Below the pieces are notes generated by a model that saw nothing but the letters and a program-made list of their open reading frames with translations, did not search any database and was not told the origin of the DNA. From Paramoeba atlantica (lineage: Eukaryota; Protista; Discosea), in the NCBI GenBank assembly GCA_977017575.1, contig CDRNVI010000041.1, positions 1 through 64,000 on the forward strand: a stretch of DNA of 64,000 nucleotides. Reading direction: 5' to 3'. This document shows positions 15,511 to 62,620 of this stretch, one piece after another (positions within the stretch are counted from its first letter, which is position 1; each line of letters opens with the position of its first letter). A program made the position numbers and the translations under genes.

Positions 15511-16434
15511 ATGTTTTTTCACTTGAAAATCTTGTACTCTCGTCGTTTTTTCACACTCATTTTGGTTTCAATAGTTATGATTTTATTTGAAATGCTACAC
15601 GTTATCTTACGGCTGCATAGTGCGGAGTCCTTACCTTTACGACCAAGTCGAGTGCGAGGCGCACAACTACCCCCGGAAATGCAGCTTAGCAAATTTGTAC
15701 GCAATCTAACAAAAAAACATCCGACTTGGAGTGAAGAATTCCCAATCGCGTCATGGGAAGGAGTGCAGTGCTCATCGCCACGTCAAATACATACTGTAAG
15801 GTGGTGCAACATGGCCCTTTCTGGAGTTTTAAACTGGGATTATCTTCCGGATTCTCTCGTGCTCTTTGATATTTCTAGCGACTCTGTGACAACATATCCT
15901 AACATGTTAGCGGGCGAAGTACCGTTCTCACGATTTCCACCTAGCACGGAAGTCATTTTCCTTCATCGAAACTGCTTTGCTGGAAAGTTGGAGTTCTTCA
16001 CATTTCCGCGCAACCTTAGAAGTCTAAACCTAGCTCGGAATCAATTCACGGGAACAGGTTCCTTCCAAGAATTACCCCCTACATTGGATCATCTAAATAT
16101 TTCTCATAATTTGCTTAAAGGCGAGCTTCTCCTTGATACACTGCCATTGAACCTTCAGACGCTTCAGCTTGCGGGCAACTTTTTCACTGGAGAAGTTCGC
16201 TGGCACACTCTACCACGCTCCTTGATATCCGTGAGCGTGGGAGAAAATATGTTAACAGGGGAAATTGACTTTGGAGCAATGCCAGAAAATTTGAAGACCT
16301 TGAGTATACAAGCGAATGGGTTTTCCGGTCATTTTGACCACACAACTTGTCACCCAGCATTAAAAAGTGTCAATGCTCTCCGGAATCATTTCGTAAATAT
16401 ATCTCCCTATTTACCTCTTGGATTTACCGTATGA
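15511..16434 (+). CDS. LRR family protein 3
   Basis: RVRGAQLPPE motif, cap, about 7 LRRs; hydrophobic N-terminal stretch if ATG 15511 is used. Confidence 0.85.
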   Translation: MFFHLKILYSRRFFTLILVSIVMILFEMLHVILRLHSAESLPLRPSRVRGAQLPPEMQLSKFVRNLTKKHPTWSEEFPIASWEGVQCSSPRQIHTVRWCNMALSGVLNWDYLPDSLVLFDISSDSVTTYPNMLAGEVPFSRFPPSTEVIFLHRNCFAGKLEFFTFPRNLRSLNLARNQFTGTGSFQELPPTLDHLNISHNLLKGELLLDTLPLNLQTLQLAGNFFTGEVRWHTLPRSLISVSVGENMLTGEIDFGAMPENLKTLSIQANGFSGHFDHTTCHPALKSVNALRNHFVNISPYLPLGFTV

Positions 16435-16899: not shown

Positions 16900-17769
16900 A
16901 TGTTTCCGCTACTTTTCTACTTCGCGTGCATTCGTTTTTCGTCTGGATTTCTTGTAGACAGTAACCCTTCAAAACGGCGCAAACTTGGTCGAGTTAGCCC
17001 CAGCATCCTACCACAGGAAATGCAATTTCCTCAGTTCGTGCGGCACTTACAAAATCCCCCTCCCTCTTGGTCACTTACTACCCCTACATGCGAGTGGGAA
17101 CGTGTGACATGTGACGCGGAAGGACGGCTTCGGTCGGTGTCATGGGATGCGATGGATCTCCGAGGCAATCTAAGCTGGAGCTATCTTCCACCAACGTGCC
17201 AATGCGTCTCGGCTGTGACAAATTTCTTATCCGGGGAACTTCTCCTAGGGGATCTTCCCTATGCCTTACGTGCTCTGAGCCTCACGGACAATGACTTAGT
17301 TGGTCCGCTGTACTTAGCAGACGTCCCAGGTACGATGGAAATGCTCAATTTGAGCACAAACGCACACACAGGCGAAATTCATCTTGAATCTCTTCCAAGG
17401 AAGGTGAATTATCTTTCGCTTTCTGGAAACCGACTTACCGGACCATTAAATCTGACAAGCCTACCCCCGGCAATGGAATTATTATTTCTATCCTCGAATC
17501 GGTTTGAGGGCGCTGTAGATTTGAGGCAGCTGCCCCTCTCGCTCCGCGAACTGCACTTAGGAGAAAATTCTCTCTCCGGTTGCATCGTGCTTTCCGCTCT
17601 ACCAGATAGCTTAGAAGTTCTTGCCATGAATTCCAACTCTATAAAGGGAAATGTTGAATTTGACAATATTTCCACATCTTTGCACACTTTAGATCTTACT
17701 GATACCGAAGTCTCCGGAACGGTACCACCCCACCTAGAATTTGTTGTCTGGATAGGGGAATCGCTGTAG
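16900..17769 (+). CDS. LRR family protein 4
   Basis: RVSPSILPQE motif, cap, about 7 LRRs. Confidence 0.85.
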   Translation: MFPLLFYFACIRFSSGFLVDSNPSKRRKLGRVSPSILPQEMQFPQFVRHLQNPPPSWSLTTPTCEWERVTCDAEGRLRSVSWDAMDLRGNLSWSYLPPTCQCVSAVTNFLSGELLLGDLPYALRALSLTDNDLVGPLYLADVPGTMEMLNLSTNAHTGEIHLESLPRKVNYLSLSGNRLTGPLNLTSLPPAMELLFLSSNRFEGAVDLRQLPLSLRELHLGENSLSGCIVLSALPDSLEVLAMNSNSIKGNVEFDNISTSLHTLDLTDTEVSGTVPPHLEFVVWIGESL

Positions 17770-19513: not shown

Positions 19514-19751
19514 TAAAGGACATGTAGACACATTAAAAAAAACGAAACATGCACATTATGTATAGTACGTAGAGTATGTCATGTATTGCTGATACATGTA
19601 GTATATTGGAACTGCACTGCATATTGTAAATGATGCTTTCTAAGTGATGCTAATGATTCGGCAATTGGTTTCTCAAACGTAATATTAAGCTTCAGTAAAG
19701 TACATCAGGTCAGTTGTGTAGTGCATTTCTTTCTTGGCTTATATCACATTC

Positions 19752-20591
19752 ATGACTATGAAACGTTATTGCTCGAATTTTCCGGCTCGCATTTACTCGA
19801 GCGCGGACAGCGGATCTGTGAGACAGCCTCAAAAACTTGGAAAGGTCCATTCTGCCGTGCTTCCCCTGGAAGTCCAATTTACGCAGTTCCTATCTAATGT
19901 AAGCAATTGGCATTCGACGTGGAAAGCCGAAAACCATTTCCTGGAGTGGAGTGGGGTATCTGTTTTCGAAGGTGATATGCCCGATACGGGCATGCAGAGC
20001 CTCCCTGCGCCACATCTACGAGTTATATGGTGCTTGAAATCTTTATCTGGATCGCCACGATGGGAGCTTATACCTTCCGAGGTATTTCATCTGGACCTGT
20101 CGCAGAACAATTTAAAAGGTGGTCTACCTTTTTCGAGATTTCCAGAAACGCTGCTTTGGCTTAATTTCAATGAAAACTATTTTTCGGGAGAGATTGATTG
20201 GAGCAGTCTTCCATCATATTTGAGCTTTATAAATATTTCGTTTAACGATCTCCGTGGAGCCGTGGATCTTACGAACCTCCCCGATACCCTTCAGTCACTC
20301 AGTCTTTCCGGGAATAGATTTACAGGAAATGTGCAGCTGGGACATCTGCCGAAACGACTGATCACGTTGGAGCTTTCTCACAATAAGTTTGCAGGTGAGT
20401 TGGATCTTGGTGACTTACCAGAGTCGTTGAGTTACGTCAGTTTGAACAACAATAAGTTCAATGCTTTAAAAGGAACACGATATCTGCCCATTACAATGAG
20501 TCGACTGTATCTCATGGAAAATTGCTTTAAAGAGAAACCGAAGGATCATCTTCCTGCTTACGTGCGTTGGTCGCCTCAATTAGTGGGTTAA
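19752..20591 (+). CDS. LRR family protein 6
   Basis: KVHSAVLPLE motif, about 7 LRRs; first ATG in the ORF is 19752. Confidence 0.85.
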   Translation: MTMKRYCSNFPARIYSSADSGSVRQPQKLGKVHSAVLPLEVQFTQFLSNVSNWHSTWKAENHFLEWSGVSVFEGDMPDTGMQSLPAPHLRVIWCLKSLSGSPRWELIPSEVFHLDLSQNNLKGGLPFSRFPETLLWLNFNENYFSGEIDWSSLPSYLSFINISFNDLRGAVDLTNLPDTLQSLSLSGNRFTGNVQLGHLPKRLITLELSHNKFAGELDLGDLPESLSYVSLNNNKFNALKGTRYLPITMSRLYLMENCFKEKPKDHLPAYVRWSPQLVG

Positions 20592-21107: not shown

Positions 21108-21689
21108 ATGCTACAAAGAACCTGGCGTGCACTCGCTACTCCTCTCTTTCACGTAGATCTCACCGATTTGCAACAAAGTACGGTTGATGTCAACGAGCGT
21201 ATTGACCAGCTCATCAACCGTGGTCTCACCGGCAGTACCAAGTGGTGTCTTGCCTTGCTCAATCGATCCGTTGTGTACTACGCATTAAAAGATTATGTGA
21301 AATCTCGTGAAGACGCGATTGACGCTCATGAGGCATTAATTGAGCGCTGCACAAACACTTCTACTCATTTATTTCTCTCGTCAACGTTAGCAGCAAAGGC
21401 GTGTCGTGCTCTGAGCGATGAGATCGATCTTGCAGAGAAGGAATACGCCGTGGCGAGTCACTCACACGTGATACGAACGCGAGTAAAGCCGCGGACCGTA
21501 CGCGATATGATGCGCGACCGACGTCGAAGTCTTAGCCAATATTTGCGGCAAGAGGCAGAGGAATTCGAGCGGTGTGCAAAGCGCATCTCCCAGCTCCCGG
21601 AGAAAGCATTTATGCGCGACAAGTCTCAGAGAGTGTACACGCAGGATGACCCGGATTATGATAAGTCACGGTACCCATCCGAGGAATAG
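21108..21689 (+). CDS. hypothetical protein with a TPR-like segment, probably mitochondrial
   Basis: MLQRTWRAL presequence-like start; ALLNRSVVYYALKDYVKSREDAIDA resembles a TPR helix pair. Confidence 0.55.
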   Translation: MLQRTWRALATPLFHVDLTDLQQSTVDVNERIDQLINRGLTGSTKWCLALLNRSVVYYALKDYVKSREDAIDAHEALIERCTNTSTHLFLSSTLAAKACRALSDEIDLAEKEYAVASHSHVIRTRVKPRTVRDMMRDRRRSLSQYLRQEAEEFERCAKRISQLPEKAFMRDKSQRVYTQDDPDYDKSRYPSEE

Positions 21690-22564
21690 GAAGCCTAATG
21701 AGGAAAACATGCATAGGTATATTGGAAGCAAAACGGTAAAACCGTGTAGAGGGGTTTCAATTTAACTTGGGTAGGACAATGAGACACACGACATTGGTCA
21801 AATCTCCCTTTTTTCCCCCAATCGTTTTTGAAGTTTTGAAGGGCACTCCAAATACTAAAATTAGTTACTTGTATTTCATCTGCTCATCTTCTGAGGCTGA
21901 AATAAAGGCCATTCGTGCTTTAAATTTCCCATTTCGCTCGTTCATGTATTGCCCATACAGTATCGATACTCCACCGAACTCTATAAGTGTGTCACACCTT
22001 TTGCCAACCTGTTGTGCCATAATTTGAGCCCTAGAGCTCTTATTTTCTATAAATGTCCCCGAATGTCTTGGTGTAAATAAGTCAAAGTATTCTCTTTCGT
22101 CAATACCAATCTAGAAGGATTGTAAAATCGCTGAACTCGAAAAAAACATTGAAGTATTTTTGAAAAAAAATTTGGGGGAAAAAAAGGGAGATTCCACCCA
22201 CCACATTAGTACATAACGTCGTGACTGGTAAATATCGGTAACAGTGTCTGGGTCTATAGCACACTCCTGAAGGCTTCTAATCTATTTTTAGAACTTTGAG
22301 ACATGTCATGATAAATTTATGAAGTTAATACGAAGTGCTGTAGCCCGCCCAGTAAGATAGGTATTGGGTCAATGTTGCCTAATCTCTCTTACTGGGGGTA
22401 TGCTTCTCCTTCTCTTTTCTCCCAACACTTTTGATAAGTTTCCTTATTTCTGAAAACGTGTTAAAACGCTTATTTAGGTTACCCCCGAGGCCCCCGGCAC
22501 GCGGACATCCACTCTCTACTCCCTGTACGCTCTCCCGACCCAATTATCTCTAACTGGGGAGTAT

Positions 22565-22622
22565 TCTACTGCGGGGTCTTTTACTGGGGTATCTTTTACT
22601 GGGGTGTCTTTTACTGGGGGAG
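22565..22622. repeat. degenerate 15-bp tandem repeat (CTTTTACTGGGGTRT), about 4 copies
   Basis: Visible in the sequence upstream of the thioredoxin reductase gene. Confidence 0.7.
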
Positions 22623-22787
22623 TCTACGGTAATGAACCGATCACCGACAATGCTTTTGTTATTGATCCTACTCTGACCGGTATCGAAACGACACGATCTT
22701 TTTATCCTTCCTCTATACCTTCCTTTTTTACCTCTTTTACCTCCCGCGCTCGGTTTCTCCCCCCCACCACGCTCACCCCACCACCCC

Positions 22788-24365
22788 ATGACCTCACCCG
22801 ACACCCCACCGACTTCCTACGACCTCCTGGTCATCGGCGGCGGCTCCGGGGGCATTGCCTGCGCCCGGAGGGCAGCCGCCCTGGGCGCCCACGTCGGCCT
22901 CTGTGACTTCGTCGCCCCCTCCCCCACCCTTGGCACCTCCTGGGGTCTCGGCGGGACCTGTGTGAATGTGGGCTGTATCCCAAAGAAACTCATGCACAAT
23001 GCCGCACGGCTGGGAGGGGAGGCCCACCACGCGGCCTGCGCATTCGGCTGGGGCAACGACGCCTCCCCCCCGACCCCCCAGGCCCACACCTGGGACGTGC
23101 TGCGGCAAAATGTACTCCTGCACATCAAATCGTTAAATTTTGGGTATAATGTCGAGCTGCGAAAAGCGGGGGTGAAATATCACAACGCGCTGGCCTCCAT
23201 ACGAAATGTAAAAAGCGGCGCCCCCTACGAGATTGCGTTACGGAGTAAAGCCGGGGAGGCCTCGACGGTGTGGGCGGCTCGGGTTGTGCTGGCGATGGGG
23301 GGACGTCCGACGCTCCCCGCGGAGTGTCCTGGGGCGCGGGCGTATGGTATCACCTCGGATGATTTGTTTCGGCTAGCGCGGGACCCCGGGAGGTGCTGCG
23401 TGGTGGGGGCGTCCTATGTGGCGCTGGAGTGTGCGGGATTCCTGCGGGGGTTGGGGAAGGAAGTGGTGGTGCTGATCCGGTCGATTCCGCTACGGGGGTA
23501 TGACCAGCAGATGGCGCAAAAGATCGTGGAGTTTATGGAGACCGTTGAGGGGGTGCGATTTGTACGTCAAGCGGTGCCGGTGTCGGTAGAAGTGGTGAAA
23601 CCGGAAGCGGGAAATTCTACTCCAGATGAGATTGCTGGTCCTGAACGTCGAAAAGTAACTTGGCGTCATGCCGATGGTACCACCGGAGCTGAGATATTTG
23701 ATACGGTCTTGTTCGCCATTGGACGCACCCCGGAGACAACTAAGGTAGGATTGCCCCTGGAGGCCGTAGACGTAAAAAATGGAAAAGTACTCGTTGATTC
23801 TGTAGATCAAGTCGTGGGAGTCCATAACGTGTACGCAATTGGAGATATCGCGCAAGGGGGGCTGGAGCTCACTCCGGTCGCCATACGTCAAGGACAGCTT
23901 CTCGCAGATCGTCTTTTTGGAGGCCGTACGGAAGCGCTTTGTTTTGAGAAGGTCCCCACAACAGTCTTTACCCCCTTGGAATATGGTTGTGTTGGGCTAA
24001 GTGAGGAACGGGCAACGGAAATCTACGGCGAAGATGCTATAGAAGTCTATCACAGCTCATTTACCCCCCTGGAGTGGACATTGGTACATTCCTACCCGGC
24101 TAACACGTGTTACATTAAAATAATCACTACGCGCCCCCTTCGGGGCACTGGTGACCACGGTGAACGTGTAGTTGGGTTTCATATTCTGTCCCCCAACGCA
24201 GGTGAGATCACACAAGGAGTAGCGGTGGCCTTGTGTGCTAATGCAACGAAACAGCATTTTGACACTGCTTTAGGTATTCATCCCACGGTGGCTGAGGAAA
24301 TGATTGGCTTGCATGTTACGAAGCGTTCCGGGAAGGATCCGGAAAAATCGGGTTGCTGAGGTTAA
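22788..24365 (+). CDS. TXNRD: high-Mr (animal-type) thioredoxin reductase, selenoprotein ending Gly-Cys-Sec-Gly
   Basis: GGGSGG FAD motif, GGTCVNVGCIPKK, GASYVALECAGF, GIHPT; end reads GGT TGC TGA(24357-24359) GGT TAA, paralleling mammalian TKRSG...GCUG. Confidence 0.92.
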
Positions 24366-24932
24366 TGGAGACAAAGTTGGTAGCTATTCGTGGTGCTTCT
24401 GGGGCGTGCGCAAGTAAGGTACTTTTTAAGACCATACACCACACCCTTAAGCGACCACGCTGAGATCGCTATCCCCAATTTTGTCTCCCGATTTTTTCTT
24501 CTTTGGTTGCGTCTACAGATGACGCACTTCTCTGTGAAGAAGTCGGAGGAAAGGGCATCCCGCTCTCTCCGGTTTCGGATATCAACTTTAACTTAAATTT
24601 CTGAACTTTGGAGATTTAACTTATTTTTTAATTCTATAGGTATTCTAGTGCATCTCTATCTGAAGAGATGGCATTTTATGTTGACGTGTGATAATAGCTA
24701 AGGCATATACAATATGCTCGGTGTTTCTTTTGTGATCTAATCATTTACTTGCAAGAGTAGGCACTTACGTATGCATGTCATCGATTGATCTTTATTCTAC
24801 GCTTTGAATGAGCCAGGGTGCAAACCCGACAGTTGGTTTAACTATTGTATCGTTTCGTTTAAGAAGTAAAAAGTATACAGCAAATTACTTATACATTTAG
24901 TTACTTGTACATTTAGATATTGCATCAAGAAT

Positions 24933-25709
24933 ATGCTACTTTCCCTTTTAGCACCGGCTGAAATACTTGCACAGGATTATCGTCCCTCAAAGGTTCGCGG
25001 TGCTCTGCTTCCGGAGGAAAACGATCTGCTTCGCGTGCTACAGAATACATCTTTTATTATGCCGTCCTGGACAAATGAAGTCCCTGCATGCGATTGGCGT
25101 CGCGTGTCTTGTGACGACAAGAGACGTGTTTCGCGTATCTCTTGGTATGAGCTCCATTTGATCGGTGAGCTGCATTGGTCATTTTTTCCAATGCACTTAA
25201 AGTCTATTGATCTCAGTTCTAACTTACTACATGGACAGGTACCTTTTGATGTGCTACCTGTGGAACTTGAAACACTTAATTTAAGCGGCAATAAATTTTA
25301 TGGAAAGCTTGACTTCACCTGCTTGCCACCCACCCTTCGTGCTCTTCTTCTGAGACAGAACGAATTTGACGGGGCCGTCGCATTACCGACAATGCCGAAG
25401 AGCCTACAAAAATTATCACTGTCGATGAATAAGTTCACTGGGACGCTTGATTTTTCAAACCTCCCACCGAATCTTACGATGCTTAGTCTCGATGCAAATG
25501 CCTTTACAGGTTCTGTTTCATTTCCCAATTTGCCTAAGACACTTCGATGGCTGAATTTGACAGGAAATTGTCTTAGTGGAACCGTTGATCTGCGTTCATA
25601 TTTGGGACGCCAGATAACGATTAAGTTATCCTATAATGCATTCGATGAAATTTTGCCGTCAGATCTGCCCGTGAATTTTTATGTTCGTGGACAACAAGTG
25701 CGTATATGA
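24933..25709 (+). CDS. LRR family protein 7
   Basis: KVRGALLPEE motif, PACDW cap, about 6 LRRs. Confidence 0.85.
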   Translation: MLLSLLAPAEILAQDYRPSKVRGALLPEENDLLRVLQNTSFIMPSWTNEVPACDWRRVSCDDKRRVSRISWYELHLIGELHWSFFPMHLKSIDLSSNLLHGQVPFDVLPVELETLNLSGNKFYGKLDFTCLPPTLRALLLRQNEFDGAVALPTMPKSLQKLSLSMNKFTGTLDFSNLPPNLTMLSLDANAFTGSVSFPNLPKTLRWLNLTGNCLSGTVDLRSYLGRQITIKLSYNAFDEILPSDLPVNFYVRGQQVRI

Positions 25710-28714: not shown

Positions 28715-29455
28715 ATGAAGCACGCTTATTTATTCAGTTGTCACGATTCAAGATCGTCCGAACAAAGTTCTAATTCTCGTGCCAGCAGAGTCGGAAGAGC
28801 AAATTTACCACCTGAATATGAACTTGTGCAACTTATTGAGGATATCGGAAAAAAACATTCCACGTGGAATCCATCAGTCCCTGCTTGTGAGTGGAAAGGT
28901 GTCAAGTGTGAGGGCAGTTGTATTACTAAGATAGATTGGATAGGACAAAGTCTTTTCGGGTCCATTCGATGGCCCTCGCTTCCGCAGTCACTGCAGATCT
29001 TTCTAGTAAGTACGAACCAGCTTATGGGGACTGTCGAACTCGATGCCCTGCCCTCGGGTATTCACCATTTCAATGTGATGGACAATGCTTTCAGTGGGAA
29101 ATTGGAGCTTCAACACTTACCCCAGACGGTAAAGCGGCTTAACTTTAGTTACAACCAATTTGAAGGAGAGGTTGACCTAAGTCACCTTCCCGCAGATCTT
29201 GTGATGCTCCATTTAGGCTACAACCACTTGTCTGGTCCTATAAATTTGACTAACCTTCCACCTAATCTAGTCGACTTATCTTTGCCTAAGAATCAGTTTT
29301 CGGGTACCGCAATCATGAATAACTTGCCAAAAAGCTTACAGGCACTAGATGTACATGACAATGAACAATTATGTGGTGAAGTGGACGCCTCAACGTTGCC
29401 AACCATTTTAAACAGCTTTCTTTATTGTGATACTAAAATAATTCTTCAAGAATGA
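28715..29455 (+). CDS. LRR family protein 8
   Basis: RVGRANLPPE motif, PACEWKGVKC cap, about 6 LRRs. Confidence 0.85.
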   Translation: MKHAYLFSCHDSRSSEQSSNSRASRVGRANLPPEYELVQLIEDIGKKHSTWNPSVPACEWKGVKCEGSCITKIDWIGQSLFGSIRWPSLPQSLQIFLVSTNQLMGTVELDALPSGIHHFNVMDNAFSGKLELQHLPQTVKRLNFSYNQFEGEVDLSHLPADLVMLHLGYNHLSGPINLTNLPPNLVDLSLPKNQFSGTAIMNNLPKSLQALDVHDNEQLCGEVDASTLPTILNSFLYCDTKIILQE

Positions 29456-29722: not shown

Positions 29723-31118
29723 CAGGGGTGCAAATTAGATGCTGGGGGGGTCTAAAATTAGCAATGTTTGCGCAATTTTGGAAAATAATAGCGCATTCGA
29801 GAGCTCTCGCAGAGATCTATGTTTTGGCGCTATTATCACGTTAAAAGAAAACAAATTTGAAAAAGATATCTTTTTAAAAGGTTTTTTACCCCCCTAAAAG
29901 TTGCAGATTTTTCAATTTTTGCAGTTTTTTCCGTGTTTTTTTGTTTTTCAGCTCACTATTATACCGCAAAAGCGATCCCTCTCTAAGCAAAACAGTAAAA
30001 GCTTATCTGATGGATCACATGAACCCACGGGGCACACAAAATATTCACACAGGATGCTTCTCGTTAAAGATTACGAGAATACAAACTCCTACAGTGCCAC
30101 TTGCCAAAGACAAGGCGTCCACGACAGCACTGTTAAGTTGTGGGTTAAGCGATTTGAGGAAACCGGGGATGTTGAACGTGCTACGCCTCCTCGCGAACGC
30201 ACTGTGACAACGCCGGAGCTTCTTGAGGCATGCCGCGAAATTATTGACGCGTCCAACGCGACAAGTGCGCGAGGTTGTCCCTCGTGGAGTTTTATTCTTC
30301 GAGAGGTTAGGAAAAGGGGTTTCACCTGCAGCAGGCCGACCCTAGTAAATTTTTTAAAGGACGAAGGGATGATCCAACGATCTTTTTCTAAAGGCCTGTT
30401 CTTAACTGAAGTTCACAAGGCCAAGCGACTAACATTTGCACTGAAAATGCAGAAGTGGTCCGTCGCACAGCTTCGTCACATTATTTGGTGTGACGAAAAA
30501 AAGTTTACTTGTCAACTTGGGCGTGAAAGCCGTTCTTACATTTGCCGAGCGAGTGACCCCCCCAAGCCACCCCTAAAAGCTGCGCAAAAATGTTTTGGGG
30601 GGGATGGAGTAAACGTTTGGATGGGTATAAGCCTTATTTATGGAGTTTTTTATCACGTCTTTCCCGACAGGGACAGAAATGGGAAACTTACGATTACTTC
30701 AAATGTTTTTAAAGCAGCTATGACAAAAAGGGGGGGTTTCTAAAGTTACTTGAAGCGTCATAGCGGTACTAGAGTTGCAATGGATAATGCTCCTTGTCAC
30801 AATGGCACCTTTAAAACCTTTCGAGAAAACCAAGTCTTTGTTTTAGACTTTCTCCCAAAATCCCCAGATCTTAACCCTATTGAAAACATTTGGGACATCA
30901 TGGACACCTTTATTAAAGATGGTACAAACCCAGAAAATAGGACTGAACTTTTGTATTCTATTGAAAAGGCGGTTGATTACATTAAAACAGATGGTCATGA
31001 CATGCTCATAAACACTTTAAACAGCATGCCGCGGCGTTTCGACATAGTAGTAGAAAAAAAGGGGAAAGTTGTAATTATTGAACGTACAAAACTTTTTAAT
31101 TCATTTTTTGCATTTTGA
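29723..31118 (+). mobile_element. Tc1/IS630-like transposon with near-complete transposase (one in-frame stop)
   Basis: TA|CAGGGGTG left end; HTH (SYSATCQRQGVHDSTVKLWVKRFEETG), WCDEKKF, VWMGIS, TAA at 30741-30743, MDNAPCH, PKSPDLNPIENIW; right TIR not clearly found. Confidence 0.88.
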
Positions 31119-41760: not shown

Positions 41761-41981
41761 ACATATTTATGGAAAACACGAATTTTGCTCAGCCGTTACC
41801 CTCATCACATAATTTCGCAACAGTACTCAAATGCTCGAGGCAGACCAAACACTTCCTTGAGTAATCGGGAGAGTGACAATAAACAAAAATATCTCCGTAA
41901 AACACATTAAACAAGAAGACACCAGTACCATTGCAATCACAAAATCTAAAGATACTTCATTTCTTTTTACATCCGACTCTT

Positions 41982-43337
41982 ATGCCGACATTCACACACC
42001 TCCCCGTGACCTTGACATCCGATGAACCACGACGCGGGCGCGTTCGCGGTGCCGTCATGCCCGCCGAGTACTACCTGGAGCGTTTTATCCAGCACCTTAA
42101 CAACCCGCACCGCTCCTGGCACTCCCGTCGTGCGGCGTGTCGTTGGGACGGCATCACGTGCTCCGATGCGGGAGTCCTGGAGGACATGGCATGGAACGAA
42201 CGTGAGCTCTCCGGGAACCTCTCCTGGAGCTACATCCCCAACACCCTGCTCTATCTCGACCTCAAAGGGAATGAACTCGACGGGGGCCTTTCCCTCCCCG
42301 AGCTCCCCCCCACCCTGGAAACCCTTTACGGGGACCATAACCAATTTACGGGGTGCCTTGATTTACGCTCTCTCCCCGGCAACCTCTCCGATATCCGTCT
42401 CGGGAACAATCATCTCCACGGGGAGCTCGAGCTCACCTCGCTGCCCCCTCCGCTTACCTATCTCGGGTTAAACCGTAACCGTTTCGAGGGGGGGATCTCC
42501 CTCGAGGCCCTTCCCCCGTTGTTGGAGTACATCCGACTGGATCATAATCAATTCACCGGACCCGTGGAGCTGCGGAATTTGCCCAAGACCCTGCAGGATT
42601 TGTATCTGGACCACAACGCGCTGAGCGGTCACCTGTGCCTCAGTGCGCTCCCCCCGTCGCTGGAGTATGTCCGGCTGGAGCATAACGCGTTCGAGGGAGC
42701 GGTGGATTTCACCCGACTCCCGGAGGCGCTGAGTGATATCTACGTGGACCATAACCGGTTAAGCGGGGCGTTGGATTTGACCCATCTCCCGCCTCGATTG
42801 GCGTATGCGCACCTGGAGAAGAATGAGTTTAGTGGAGGGTTGGGGCTGGATAACCTTCCGCCGGGTTTATCTTTTCTTCGGGTCGATCATAATAATTTGA
42901 CCGGGGGGCTGGGTTTGCGACATCTGCCACTGGAGATGGAGACGCTTTATGTGAACCATAACGAGTTCGAGGGGGGCGTGGATCTAACCGGGCTACCTGG
43001 CCAACTTCTGGATCTGCGGGTGGACCACAATAGGCTGAGTGGGCCGGTGCAATTCGAGATACTTCCCGGTGGGCTGCAGATGCTTCGACTGGACCATAAT
43101 CGGCTCACAGGGCCGGTGAATTTGGCGAACCTGCCGCCCGCCCTTACATCGCTTCGGTTAGAGTATAATCAACTCGACGGGATCGCGGATCTGCGACATT
43201 TGCCCAACGGAATGCTAGAGGTGAACTTGCGAAATAATGACTTCGTGGCGTTTGAGAAACCAGAGATTCCCCCTTTGCTGTGCGTATTCCGATTGGGATC
43301 ATCACACTCCAAAAAAAAGAGGACTGTGAAGCGATGA
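41982..43337 (+). CDS. LRR family protein 10 (about 15 repeats)
   Basis: RGRVRGAVMPAE motif, cap, 15 x 22-aa LRRs, many with DHN. Confidence 0.9.
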   Translation: MPTFTHLPVTLTSDEPRRGRVRGAVMPAEYYLERFIQHLNNPHRSWHSRRAACRWDGITCSDAGVLEDMAWNERELSGNLSWSYIPNTLLYLDLKGNELDGGLSLPELPPTLETLYGDHNQFTGCLDLRSLPGNLSDIRLGNNHLHGELELTSLPPPLTYLGLNRNRFEGGISLEALPPLLEYIRLDHNQFTGPVELRNLPKTLQDLYLDHNALSGHLCLSALPPSLEYVRLEHNAFEGAVDFTRLPEALSDIYVDHNRLSGALDLTHLPPRLAYAHLEKNEFSGGLGLDNLPPGLSFLRVDHNNLTGGLGLRHLPLEMETLYVNHNEFEGGVDLTGLPGQLLDLRVDHNRLSGPVQFEILPGGLQMLRLDHNRLTGPVNLANLPPALTSLRLEYNQLDGIADLRHLPNGMLEVNLRNNDFVAFEKPEIPPLLCVFRLGSSHSKKKRTVKR

Positions 43338-59980: not shown

Positions 59981-62620
59981 ATGCTTCTTGAGGTTCGTTC
60001 GCATAGAACATGGAGACCTCCGTCCGCGGGCGGGTCACAAATTGAGGTAAGTTCTGAAACACCCGAAGCCTCTGCCTACAGAATGTTGATCACTCAATCC
60101 GTTCCTCTTTCTATTCAACTTACACGAGGCAGTCTTCTTTTTAGTAATTGTCTAGAGAACCGTTTCTTAGCACATGCATGCGGTCGCCCGAATGTGTGTG
60201 AGCGCATTCGTTTATCAGATTTCGATATAAAACAAGTGAATTCATCAGCATGCAAAGAACAGGGATATCAAAGTATTGGCACATTTACGGATAACCGTTC
60301 TGCCCCTATTCCACTCTGCATAACAGGAGTTCCCGGCACGCAGTCGTGCGCGTATCTGGTAGGCACCTTAAATGGGCTTCACGAAATACAAAAAGGGGTT
60401 CCGTATTCCACATTGAAATACACGCTCTCCGATGAAGTACATGCCATACAATGTGTTAGTGCCACACACGCAGTGCTGGGACTAGGAGACGGAAGTCTTG
60501 CGCTGTACTCTTTTAAAACTGGAATTACAGACACAACCCGCTCGCTTGTCCCTGGGATACAGAAAATACCCATACGTCAGCTTTTGCACCACAGCCGAAA
60601 TGAAATGATCTTTGCACTTCATGGAGATTTTTTCATTGGGCTTCAGTATGATTTAACCTCCGAACGGTTTCGAACACAGGAGAGCGATGCTGTACTTTGC
60701 CACACATTACTTCATGCGCCCCGACTGGGTTCATTTTGTGTTTTAGCTCATTTTAAGATACCCACGTTGACCTTTCTCACATGGGTGGATAAAACGAATC
60801 TGCTACAATTTGAGTGGAATCCAGAGCAGCCCGAGGCGCTTCGAGAAACGAATGTGGCCTGGTTGGAGACGTTCACATCTAGAGATACCTGCAGTGATGT
60901 CACCAGCACACTTGCCTCTGAGGATGCAGTACTGCTCGGAGATGATAGTGGAACACAAAGCTTTAGTAGAATGGGCACAATACAGGGATTATGCACTTCA
61001 AAGGAAAGTGATAAAGGAGTAGCCGTTATTATCCTGTCCAACACGCATATACTCGTACAAAACTATACAGTCGGACGCTGTTTACTTGTGTGTTCGGGTA
61101 GCTTGCAAATAATACCATTACATCATCCGTTTGAGGATTCGGTTCTTATGTCGCTGGATCGTGAGAATTACTTTCTGTGGTGCGCCGGATATCATTCCAC
61201 AGGTCATTTAGCACTATGTGCACAAAATCAGAGCACTGGAGCTGTACATTCTTGGCATATTGCACCAAAGGAAGCAATTGCGTTTTCAGGCGACGAAAGT
61301 GCATTTGAGATCGAGGAAAAAATATCCGACTTTAGGAAGCATGATAGAACCATTGGGTCCGCACTAGGGGTCCGCTCTCAAATAGAAACTTGGCGGCGAA
61401 TAGAAATCATGAACATGTTAAAAATGCGAGAATTTCCATTTCAGGAATGGACCGTTTTTGCGGAACAAATACGCTCATCTAGTAACTTGATTTTGCGCCA
61501 ATCTCATGTGTTAGATAAAACAGTTGAAGAGCTTCGCATTTGTATTATCGGGGGACATTTAGGCCCGAATTTGCCGATATTCGACTTTGTTTCCAGAACA
61601 GTCGAGGAATCAATTTCGGCCACACAGGAAACTCATGAAAACAATATTGTAGGGGCATATCAGAGATTGATCCAAAGCTTCCCCGTATTGAAGCCTTATG
61701 AAGTGAGGTTAAAGAAATGCTTATCTGATGATTTTTCGGATTGGGTTCGCCTTGAACTTAGCTCGGAAATGATGAGTTCAATGCGTTCCTCATTAACATC
61801 GACAGATTCTTTGACGTACTCATTGTGTGCGCTTCGACACGTGCAATTTCTGGTTGATCGCTCTCTATCCCTTCGTATTCAAGTCTTATACGTCTTCTGT
61901 GAAACTTATACATCCAGGACTGAGATGTGCAGAAATTTGGGTTGGAATGTCGACGAAGCGCTACTATGCACATTTCTTAGACAGGTGGACCACGATCCTA
62001 GTAAAATGGACCCATTCACTTTCGATTCAGCTTACGGTTTGCCAATGAGTATATTTCCGCTTTCTTTGCGACGGCTGTGTTTTGGTTTAGTTTGGAACGC
62101 GTGCATGCAATGTGATGGTGAACTGAAACATTTGTCGAAACATGCCCCAACTTTAAATACAAGACCTTACGATACTCAAGCAACTTGGACACATTCTTCT
62201 CATCACGCGCATGCCGTCCAAGACTTTGGAAGCTCTCGAAATAAACAACCTGATTGGTTGATTTTTAGATCCCATTCCACGACGATATTGAGCCCTACGG
62301 AATTTCACTCTCCTTCTACCTTTTTTGTTGCTTTGGCTGGAATAGTAGACAAAGATATACGAATTATGCTTTTCGCGTTGTTTGCATCGTGTCTTGAAAA
62401 GAATTCTACAGTGTTGTTCCACACTTGGATTCCACACTTTGGCACTGATGAACTATTGCTTTGCCTAGGAAATGATTCACTGATGAAAGTACTTATACTT
62501 TTAGGTCGTGGAGATGACAAACGTGCATACGAAATCGCTAAAAGGGACGACAATGCCACACAATCCGAAGCTGTATGTTTGCGTAAGGTGGTAGAGGAAT
62601 TGGGGAAGAGATTCTCTTAA
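59981..62620 (+). CDS. hypothetical protein, 879 aa (beta-rich N-half, helical C-half; nucleoporin-like architecture possible)
   Basis: Long ATG ORF; family not recognised. Confidence 0.65.
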   Translation: MLLEVRSHRTWRPPSAGGSQIEVSSETPEASAYRMLITQSVPLSIQLTRGSLLFSNCLENRFLAHACGRPNVCERIRLSDFDIKQVNSSACKEQGYQSIGTFTDNRSAPIPLCITGVPGTQSCAYLVGTLNGLHEIQKGVPYSTLKYTLSDEVHAIQCVSATHAVLGLGDGSLALYSFKTGITDTTRSLVPGIQKIPIRQLLHHSRNEMIFALHGDFFIGLQYDLTSERFRTQESDAVLCHTLLHAPRLGSFCVLAHFKIPTLTFLTWVDKTNLLQFEWNPEQPEALRETNVAWLETFTSRDTCSDVTSTLASEDAVLLGDDSGTQSFSRMGTIQGLCTSKESDKGVAVIILSNTHILVQNYTVGRCLLVCSGSLQIIPLHHPFEDSVLMSLDRENYFLWCAGYHSTGHLALCAQNQSTGAVHSWHIAPKEAIAFSGDESAFEIEEKISDFRKHDRTIGSALGVRSQIETWRRIEIMNMLKMREFPFQEWTVFAEQIRSSSNLILRQSHVLDKTVEELRICIIGGHLGPNLPIFDFVSRTVEESISATQETHENNIVGAYQRLIQSFPVLKPYEVRLKKCLSDDFSDWVRLELSSEMMSSMRSSLTSTDSLTYSLCALRHVQFLVDRSLSLRIQVLYVFCETYTSRTEMCRNLGWNVDEALLCTFLRQVDHDPSKMDPFTFDSAYGLPMSIFPLSLRRLCFGLVWNACMQCDGELKHLSKHAPTLNTRPYDTQATWTHSSHHAHAVQDFGSSRNKQPDWLIFRSHSTTILSPTEFHSPSTFFVALAGIVDKDIRIMLFALFASCLEKNSTVLFHTWIPHFGTDELLLCLGNDSLMKVLILLGRGDDKRAYEIAKRDDNATQSEAVCLRKVVEELGKRFS

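What the first reader, a model, noticed from the sequence alone, without database searches (positions are those of the whole stretch)
22788..24365. Selenocysteine-containing thioredoxin reductase in a kinetoplastid
Seen: complete high-Mr TrxR whose apparent stop is TGA in GGT-TGC-TGA-GGT-TAA, giving the GCUG tail. Known: trypanosomatids lack TrxR and glutathione reductase and rely on trypanothione reductase; their described selenoproteins are SelK, SelT and SelTryp. Inference: either an ancestral enzyme lost in trypanosomatids or a lateral acquisition (for example from an amoeba host). Automated annotation would truncate it by two residues. I could not identify a canonical SECIS by eye in 24366-24930.
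Basis: partly seen in the sequence, partly recalled or inferred. Interest (0 to 1): 0.78.

Follow-up and report, generated by a model that had tools for sequence, protein, structure and literature searches.

The report
Selenocysteine thioredoxin reductase, Perkinsela-like kinetoplastid
This gene encodes a thioredoxin reductase whose apparent stop codon almost certainly specifies selenocysteine, guided by an RNA hairpin 178 bases downstream, but early-branching relatives of trypanosomes were already reported to keep this enzyme, so it is an annotation fix and not a surprise.

Summary
Window 22788-24356 is an intact high-molecular-weight thioredoxin reductase (E about 1e-143 to solved TrxR/TGR structures). 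It ends GGT-TGC-TGA-GGT-TAA, which reads Gly-Cys-Sec-Gly-stop.

I found one at 24534-24580. It has a GUGA / GA kink-turn core, a perfect 10-bp helix II, an unpaired AAA and a GGG/CCC mini-stem (type II). It is the only perfect match to my SECIS pattern in 128 kb. It is also the top hit of a covariance model built only from unrelated protist TrxR SECIS elements. The same layout, with different helix letters, follows the TrxR genes of Perkinsela CCAP 1560/4 and a second Perkinsela-like assembly.

The protein groups with Perkinsela and prokinetoplastid PhM-4 (support 100/98). The upstream neighbour gene is the same as in Perkinsela. A grouping with the one named amoebozoan TrxR is rejected (p-AU 3e-11). 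The gene is therefore inherited, not taken from the host and not contamination.

Butenko et al. 2020 already reported TrxR in all non-trypanosomatid kinetoplastids. I found no paper that states it uses selenocysteine.

The scan had already flagged two other Sec-TrxR findings on other pieces of this genome. Sec machinery and selenium incorporation were not tested here.

The parts
22788..24356 (+). TrxR coding sequence up to the Cys before the recoded codon (523 codons). It has FAD and NADPH binding domains, the CVNVGC redox centre (residues 58-63), the dimerisation domain and the HPTxAE His-Glu dyad (residues 498-503).
24357..24359 (+). In-frame UGA, read as selenocysteine (penultimate residue).
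   Evidence: The same TGC-TGA-GGN-stop tail is in L001, L002 and L005 and in 75 of 82 related loci. TGA is otherwise an ordinary stop in this window, ending 11 of 29 ORFs.
24360..24365 (+). GGT (the final Gly) and TAA, the true stop.
24534..24538 (+). SECIS core, 5' side: G-UGA-A (a GUGA variant of the AUGA quartet).
   Evidence: GUGA cores occur in 3 of 20 control TrxR SECIS elements.
24539..24548 (+). SECIS helix II, 5' strand (GAAGUCGGAG).
   Evidence: It forms 10 standard pairs with 24567-24576 (2 are G-U).
24549..24566 (+). Apical region: unpaired G-AAA (AAA at 24550-24552), then the mini-stem GGG (24553-55) / CCC (24559-61). This is the type II form.
24567..24576 (+). SECIS helix II, 3' strand (CUCCGGUUUC).
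24577..24580 (+). SECIS core, 3' side: G-GA-U. It gives the tandem G.A/A.G pairs with 24536-37 and a U.U pair with 24535.
   Evidence: The same GGAU is in L002 and L005.
21108..21689 (+). Upstream neighbour (193 aa). It is the ortholog of the gene directly upstream of TrxR in Perkinsela, so the gene pair is conserved.
   Evidence: 39% identity, E 6e-35 to L002 4402-4956, and E 3e-34 to L005 4135-4695.

Best explanation
Window 22788-24365 encodes a cytosolic-type, high-Mr, NADPH-dependent thioredoxin reductase of a Perkinsela-related (prokinetoplastid) kinetoplastid. Electrons pass from NADPH through FAD to the CVNVGC disulfide of one subunit. They then pass to the C-terminal Gly-Cys-Sec-Gly selenenylsulfide of the partner subunit, which reduces thioredoxin. 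This mechanism is inferred from family membership. The UGA at 24357 is decoded as selenocysteine because the 3' UTR carries a type II SECIS at 24534-24580, 178 nt downstream. That element would recruit SBP2, eEFSec and Sec-tRNA. The SECIS structure is shown here; its function is inferred. The gene was inherited vertically from the kinetoplastid ancestor and lost only in trypanosomatids.
For: Identity: searches show the domains, about 480 bits to TrxR/TGR structures, and invariant CVNVGC and HPTxAE motifs.

Tail: one search shows it in the window. Searches show TGC-TGA-GGN-TAA/TAG in all three kinetoplastid relatives for which DNA was available. One search shows it in 75 of 82 related loci. One search shows that TGA is a normal stop here, so recoding must be local.

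SECIS, five lines of evidence:
- The hairpin is in the minimum-free-energy fold.
- It is the only zero-mismatch match to my SECIS pattern on both strands of the 64-kb window, with only 3 weaker sites elsewhere.
- The same pattern picks single 3'-UTR sites in 20 control TrxR loci.
- Covariance model R1, built from 7 unrelated protist TrxR SECIS elements, ranks 24525-24589 first in the window (12.6 bits). It also finds the matching sites in L005 and L002.
- Window, L002 and L005 share the layout xGA-A / 9-10 bp / AAA / mini-stem / GGAU. Seven of 10 helix II pairs are changed on both sides between the window and L005, and all remain paired.

Descent: the clade with Perkinsela, PhM-4 and a Logan contig has support 99 and 100/98. 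The upstream gene is conserved. Butenko 2020 found TrxR absent only from trypanosomatids.
Against: No Rfam SECIS family matched, even at E 10. However, Rfam SECIS_1 found only 3 of 6 clear control elements, and all of those scored below its gathering threshold.

The R1 E-value over the whole window is only 2. It becomes meaningful only because the hit lies in the 567-nt 3' UTR.

Helix I is weak. It is a 5-bp stem closing a three-way junction.

The poly(A) site is unknown, so inclusion of the SECIS in the mRNA is not shown. The one run that may be RNA (X1) has contigs across the UGA up to 24572, but its type is only a guess.

tRNA-Sec and the Sec factors are not in this window. They are known to me only from unchecked scan notes. 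No selenium incorporation data exist.
Confidence: 0.88

Rival explanations
1. The UGA is a plain stop. The enzyme ends at Cys523, lacks the selenolthiol centre and has lost thioredoxin-reducing activity, or keeps only side activities.
For: TGA ends 11 of 29 ORFs in the window. Rfam finds no SECIS. Sec machinery was not checked here.
Against: A Gly codon followed at once by a second stop is conserved after the UGA in every kinetoplastid relative with DNA and in 75 of 82 related loci. A SECIS of the expected form lies in the 3' UTR, here and in the Perkinsela orthologs.
Confidence: 0.06
2. The gene is foreign to the kinetoplastid. It was either acquired laterally from the amoeba host or sits on a host contig in a mixed assembly.
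For: Scan notes suggest the assembly also holds amoeba contigs. The TrxR clade is not sister to the diplonemid TrxRs in my tree.
Against: The gene sits in a 64-kb unidirectional gene array. The gene pair with its upstream neighbour is conserved in Perkinsela. The protein is in a 100/98-supported clade that includes the free-living prokinetoplastid PhM-4. A clade with the amoebozoan Balamuthia is rejected at p-AU 3e-11. No Paramoeba sequence was available for the tree.
Confidence: 0.04
3. The gene is a decaying pseudogene that is no longer expressed.
For: It has the longest terminal branch in its clade (0.51). It has lineage-specific inserts. A mutational GC island covers its 5' half.
Against: The 523-codon frame is uninterrupted. 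All catalytic motifs are invariant. The SECIS is intact. Contigs from a run that may be RNA cover part of it.
Confidence: 0.02

Closest known systems
Thioredoxin reductase of Perkinsela sp. CCAP 1560/4 (P0002; loci L002 and L004) and of a second Perkinsela-like assembly (P0004; L005)
   Same: They belong to the same clade (100/98) and share 55-56% identity. The upstream neighbour gene is the same. All have Cys-UGA-Gly-stop tails and a type II SECIS with a GGAU 3' core.
   Different: The Perkinsela tails read Asn-Cys-Sec-Gly, not Gly-Cys-Sec-Gly. Their SECIS lies about 80 nt after the UGA, against 178 nt here. The L005 core is GGGA. The window protein has two inserts (near residues 274-284 and 449-458). 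The downstream neighbour differs: an LRR gene here, a cyclin in Perkinsela.
Animal TrxR1/TrxR2 and the TrxR module of platyhelminth thioredoxin-glutathione reductase (for example PDB 1h6v, 1zdl, 2x8c, 4la1)
   Same: They have the same fold, the CVNVGC centre, the His-Glu dyad and the GCUG tail. Scores are E 1e-139 to 1e-143 over the full length.
   Different: There is no N-terminal glutaredoxin domain, so this is not a TGR. Identity is about 50%. The SECIS core is GUGA, not the usual AUGA.
Trypanothione reductase of trypanosomatids
   Same: Both are class I pyridine nucleotide-disulfide oxidoreductases, and both occur in kinetoplastids.
   Different: The match is far weaker, about 180 bits against 480. 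Trypanothione reductase has no C-terminal Cys-Sec extension. According to Butenko 2020 it coexists with TrxR in non-trypanosomatid kinetoplastids.
Trypanosomatid selenoprotein genes SelK, SelT and SelTryp (Lobanov 2006, PMC1557815)
   Same: These are kinetoplastid genes with an in-frame UGA and a 3'-UTR SECIS that has a non-Watson-Crick quartet and an unpaired AA.
   Different: They are different protein families. TrxR is not among the selenoproteins described for kinetoplastids in that paper or in the 2025 mBio survey.

Membership tests
High-Mr (animal-type) selenocysteine thioredoxin reductase | Pyr_redox_2 FAD/NAD(P)-binding domain plus the Pyr_redox_dim interface domain | tested here: met
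   (E 1.8e-46 and 2.6e-23)
High-Mr (animal-type) selenocysteine thioredoxin reductase | N-terminal redox-active CVNVGC disulfide | tested here: met
   C58-V-N-V-G-C63 is invariant in the clade.
High-Mr (animal-type) selenocysteine thioredoxin reductase | C-terminal Gly-Cys-Sec-Gly encoded as GGN-TGY-TGA-GGN-stop | tested here: met
   (24351-24365). The same tail is in 75 of 82 related loci.
High-Mr (animal-type) selenocysteine thioredoxin reductase | His-Glu catalytic dyad in the interface domain (HPTxxE) | tested here: met
   H498, P499, T500 and E503 are invariant.
High-Mr (animal-type) selenocysteine thioredoxin reductase | Closer to TrxR than to glutathione reductase or trypanothione reductase | tested here: met
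   about 480 bits against about 230 and about 180.
High-Mr (animal-type) selenocysteine thioredoxin reductase | Selenium actually incorporated; NADPH-dependent thioredoxin reduction | not testable with these tools
   This needs 75Se labelling, mass spectrometry or an enzyme assay.
Eukaryotic SECIS element (type II) | Kink-turn core with tandem G.A/A.G pairs (UGA on the 5' side, GA on the 3' side) | tested here: met
   UGA at 24535-37 and GA at 24578-79.
Eukaryotic SECIS element (type II) | A before the UGA (canonical AUGA) | tested here: not met
   The base at 24534 is G. GUGA also occurs in L002 and in 3 of 20 control TrxR SECIS elements, so this is a known variant and does not exclude membership.
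Eukaryotic SECIS element (type II) | Helix II of about 9-12 bp between the core and an unpaired AA(R) | tested here: met
   10 bp with no mismatch, and AAA at 24550-52.
Eukaryotic SECIS element (type II) | Mini-stem beyond the AAR bulge | tested here: met
   GGG/CCC. The equivalent stems are present in L002 and L005.
Eukaryotic SECIS element (type II) | Helix I below the core | tested here: inconclusive
   the window has only a 5-bp stem closing a three-way junction. L002 and L005 have clear long stems.
Eukaryotic SECIS element (type II) | Located in the 3' UTR, downstream of the UGA on the same strand | tested here: met
   It lies 178 nt after the UGA and before the next ORF at 24933. The poly(A) site was not mapped.
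Eukaryotic SECIS element (type II) | Match to the curated Rfam SECIS models | tested here: not met
   Searches gave no hit. The control shows that Rfam misses half of clear protist TrxR SECIS elements.
Eukaryotic SECIS element (type II) | Recognised by an independent model of TrxR SECIS elements | tested here: met
   top hit of R1 in 128 kb at 12.6 bits. It is significant only within the UTR.
Thioredoxin-glutathione reductase (TGR) | N-terminal glutaredoxin domain | tested here: not met
   One search gives no PF00462 hit, and only 9 residues precede the FAD motif.

The most novel reading that the evidence does not exclude
Prokinetoplastids (Perkinsela and its relatives) run a selenium-dependent thioredoxin system alongside trypanothione, with non-AUGA SECIS cores (GUGA or GGGA) on their TrxR genes. 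On this reading the kinetoplastid ancestor had a larger selenoproteome than the SelK/SelT/SelTryp set described so far, and the selenocysteine nature of kinetoplastid TrxR has not yet been stated in the literature.
Probability: 0.5. Interest if true: 0.4.

Novelty: new member of a known kind. Interest (0 to 1): 0.3.

Why it matters
The finding corrects an annotation. Gene callers cut the enzyme at the UGA, as they did in the public Perkinsela record, and so remove its catalytic selenocysteine. It also adds a fourth selenoprotein family to those described in kinetoplastids. The loss of TrxR in trypanosomatids was therefore also the loss of a selenoenzyme. Finally, it supplies three GUGA/GGGA-core SECIS examples that standard models miss. 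It does not change the published picture that non-trypanosomatid kinetoplastids keep TrxR.

Tried and rejected
- Rfam scans of the 3' UTR (E up to 10) and of the whole window found no SECIS. The only hits were chance matches to snR40 and others. A control showed that Rfam is insensitive to this kind of element.
- ARAGORN found no tRNA, and so no tRNA-Sec, in the window.
- I considered the AUGA at 24519-24522 as a canonical core. No helix, AA or GA arrangement follows it.
- MAFFT alignment of all 20 control SECIS elements was too ragged to model. I used the 7 of equal geometry instead.
- The metagenome scan for close relatives returned only hits of 57% identity or less, so there was no near relative to test 3'-UTR drift.
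- The profile search did not bring up a Bodo saltans TrxR among the 120 hits listed, so I could not check whether eubodonid TrxR is Sec-type.
- Literature searches for Sec-TrxR in Bodo, Perkinsela or Euglenozoa found nothing explicit. A search for the GGGA-type SECIS paper found nothing in the library.
- The findings look-up by sequence was blank.
- The run data are contigs only, so transcript ends and expression could not be read.

Full report
**Observation.** An ATG at 22788 opens a 523-codon frame that ends GGT TGC TGA GGT TAA at 24351-24365. Pfam assigns Pyr_redox_2, Pyr_redox and Pyr_redox_dim and finds no glutaredoxin domain. Against solved structures, the best matches are thioredoxin-glutathione reductases and mammalian TrxR1/TrxR2 over the full length (E 1e-139 to 1e-143, about 480 bits). 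Glutathione reductases score about 230 bits and trypanothione reductases about 180 bits. The CVNVGC redox centre (residues 58-63) and the HPTxAE dyad (498-503) are invariant in an alignment with the nearest relatives. This is a high-Mr TrxR. It is not a TGR and not a trypanothione reductase.

**Is the UGA a selenocysteine codon?**
- All 120 best database hits end in Cys, so they are gene models cut at the same UGA.
- In the DNA of the three closest relatives I could fetch, the Cys codon is followed by TGA, a Gly codon and a true stop. This holds for L001 (a Logan contig), L002 (Perkinsela sp. CCAP 1560/4) and L005 (a second Perkinsela-like assembly).
- Among 82 related loci, 75 carry TGC-TGA-GGN-stop.
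- TGA is an ordinary stop in this window, ending 11 of 29 ORFs. The code is therefore not reassigned, and any recoding must be local.

**The SECIS.** Rfam gave nothing, even at E 10. The minimum-free-energy fold of 24505-24620 contains a strong hairpin. Read as a SECIS, it has these parts:
- G24534, then UGA 24535-37 and A24538.
- Helix II, 24539-48 paired with 24567-76: 10 standard pairs, 2 of them G-U.
- G, then AAA at 24550-52, unpaired.
- Mini-stem GGG/CCC (24553-55 / 24559-61).
- G-GA-U at 24577-80.

This is a type II SECIS with a GUGA core.

I wrote a strict ungapped pattern: UGA-N, 9-12 bp with at most 1 mismatch, AA within 2 nt, then N-GA. On both strands of the 64-kb window it matches four sites, and only this one has no mismatch. 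As a positive control, the same pattern picks one site in the 3' UTR of 20 of the 75 related TrxR loci. All are textbook type II elements, and three have GUGA cores. The pattern is therefore specific but not sensitive.

I then built covariance model R1 from seven of those control elements. None comes from the window or its clade. R1 ranks 24525-24589 first in the whole window (12.6 bits). The E-value of 2 over 128 kb corresponds to roughly 0.01 for the 567-nt UTR. R1 also recovers the corresponding sites in L005 (11.7 bits) and L002 (8.6 bits).

The three kinetoplastid elements share one layout: a G, then UGA or GGA, then A; 9-10 bp; one or two bases and AAA; a mini-stem; and GGAU. Between the window and L005, seven of the ten helix II pairs differ on both sides and all remain standard pairs.

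The Rfam blank carries little weight. SECIS_1 finds only 3 of 6 clear control elements, none reaching its gathering score, and it misses the GUGA one.

The weak points are helix I, which in the window is only a 5-bp stem closing a three-way junction, and the unmapped poly(A) site.

**Whose gene is it?**
- Nearly all ORFs of 200 aa or more lie on the + strand, with no sign of introns.
- The neighbours are small LRR proteins.
- The gene directly upstream of TrxR (21108-21689) is the ortholog of the gene directly upstream of TrxR in both Perkinsela assemblies (39% identity, E 6e-35).
- In maximum-likelihood trees the protein sits inside a clade with Perkinsela, the Logan contig and the free-living prokinetoplastid PhM-4. 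Support is SH-aLRT 99 in the quick tree and UFboot/SH-aLRT 100/98 in the careful tree.
- Forcing it together with the only named amoebozoan TrxR (Balamuthia) costs 110 log-likelihood units (p-AU 3e-11).
- Identity to Perkinsela is only 55-56%, and the exact protein is absent from the protein collection. The organism is therefore an unsampled relative, not Perkinsela CCAP 1560/4 itself.

Vertical descent is well supported. Host transfer and contamination are not, although no Paramoeba TrxR was available for the tree.

**Literature.** Butenko et al. 2020 (PMC7052976) searched Euglenozoa for trypanothione reductase, glutathione reductase and TrxR. They state that TrxRs were absent only from trypanosomatids and that TrxR was lost in the trypanosomatid ancestor. 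That paper never mentions selenocysteine. Lobanov et al. 2006 (PMC1557815) and a 2025 survey (PMC12153298) list SelK, SelT and SelTryp as the kinetoplastid selenoproteins. My searches found no open paper stating that bodonid or prokinetoplastid TrxR is a selenoprotein. From my own memory, not checked here, GGGA-type SECIS cores were described in Toxoplasma (Novoselov et al. 2007). The library search did not find that paper.

**Earlier notes of this scan.** Two other findings on other pieces of the same genome (s1-396054 and s1-403546) already reported a Sec-type TrxR with a GUGA-core SECIS. Their follow-ups reached the same verdict as mine. Other notes report tRNA-Sec, a Sec-type SPS2 and SelK elsewhere in the genome. 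I could not test these. They matter because the window itself holds no tRNA.

**Expression.** Four public runs of the same organism hold the stretch. All are served as contigs. One small 2015 run, guessed to be RNA, has contigs over 23589-23771 and 24258-24572, so they cross the UGA and reach into the SECIS. This is compatible with a transcript that includes the element but does not prove it.

**Verdict.** The missing SECIS has been found. The result is a correct annotation fix and a modest addition: the selenocysteine nature and GUGA/GGGA SECIS of prokinetoplastid TrxR. The presence of TrxR in this group was already published.

Noticed in passing
window 22700-23600: The 5' half of the TrxR gene is a GC island. 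GC is 0.60-0.69 against about 0.43 around it. GC skew flips from -0.40 (C-rich, 22700-22900) to +0.47 (G-rich, 23400-23600). It is the same kind of skew-flip island that earlier notes report across this genome.
   Followed up: partly
window 22448-22507: A stretch of about 60 nt upstream of TrxR is multi-copy in the organism's sequencing runs. Depth there is 20-60 times that of the flanks, and many contigs have different flanks. It occurs only once in this window.
   Followed up: partly
window 22555-22620: Four or five loosely tandem copies of a unit of about 14 nt (TCTTTTACTGGGG) lie just upstream of the TrxR start.
   Followed up: no
L002 6540-6555; L005 6552-6567: The Perkinsela TrxR tails read Asn-Cys-Sec-Gly (AAT/AAC TGC TGA GGA stop), not the near-universal Gly-Cys-Sec-Gly.
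   Followed up: no
L005 6639-6683: The SECIS of the second Perkinsela-like TrxR has a GGGA core: a G where the quartet U normally sits. Otherwise it has a perfect 10-bp GC-rich helix II.
   Followed up: partly
window 15511-16434, 16900-17769, 19734-20591, 24933-25709, 28715-29455, 41931-43337: Many small leucine-rich-repeat-only ORFs, all on the + strand, surround the TrxR gene.
   Followed up: no
window 29901-30743: An ORF with Tc3-type transposase helix-turn-helix domains (HTH_Tnp_Tc3_2, E 2e-8).
   Followed up: no
window 61699-61740: A weak SECIS-pattern match (AUGA core, 9 bp with 1 mismatch and 4 G-U pairs) lies inside ORF 59981-62620. A nearby site at 61719-61782 is the third hit of R1. 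It is probably chance.
   Followed up: no
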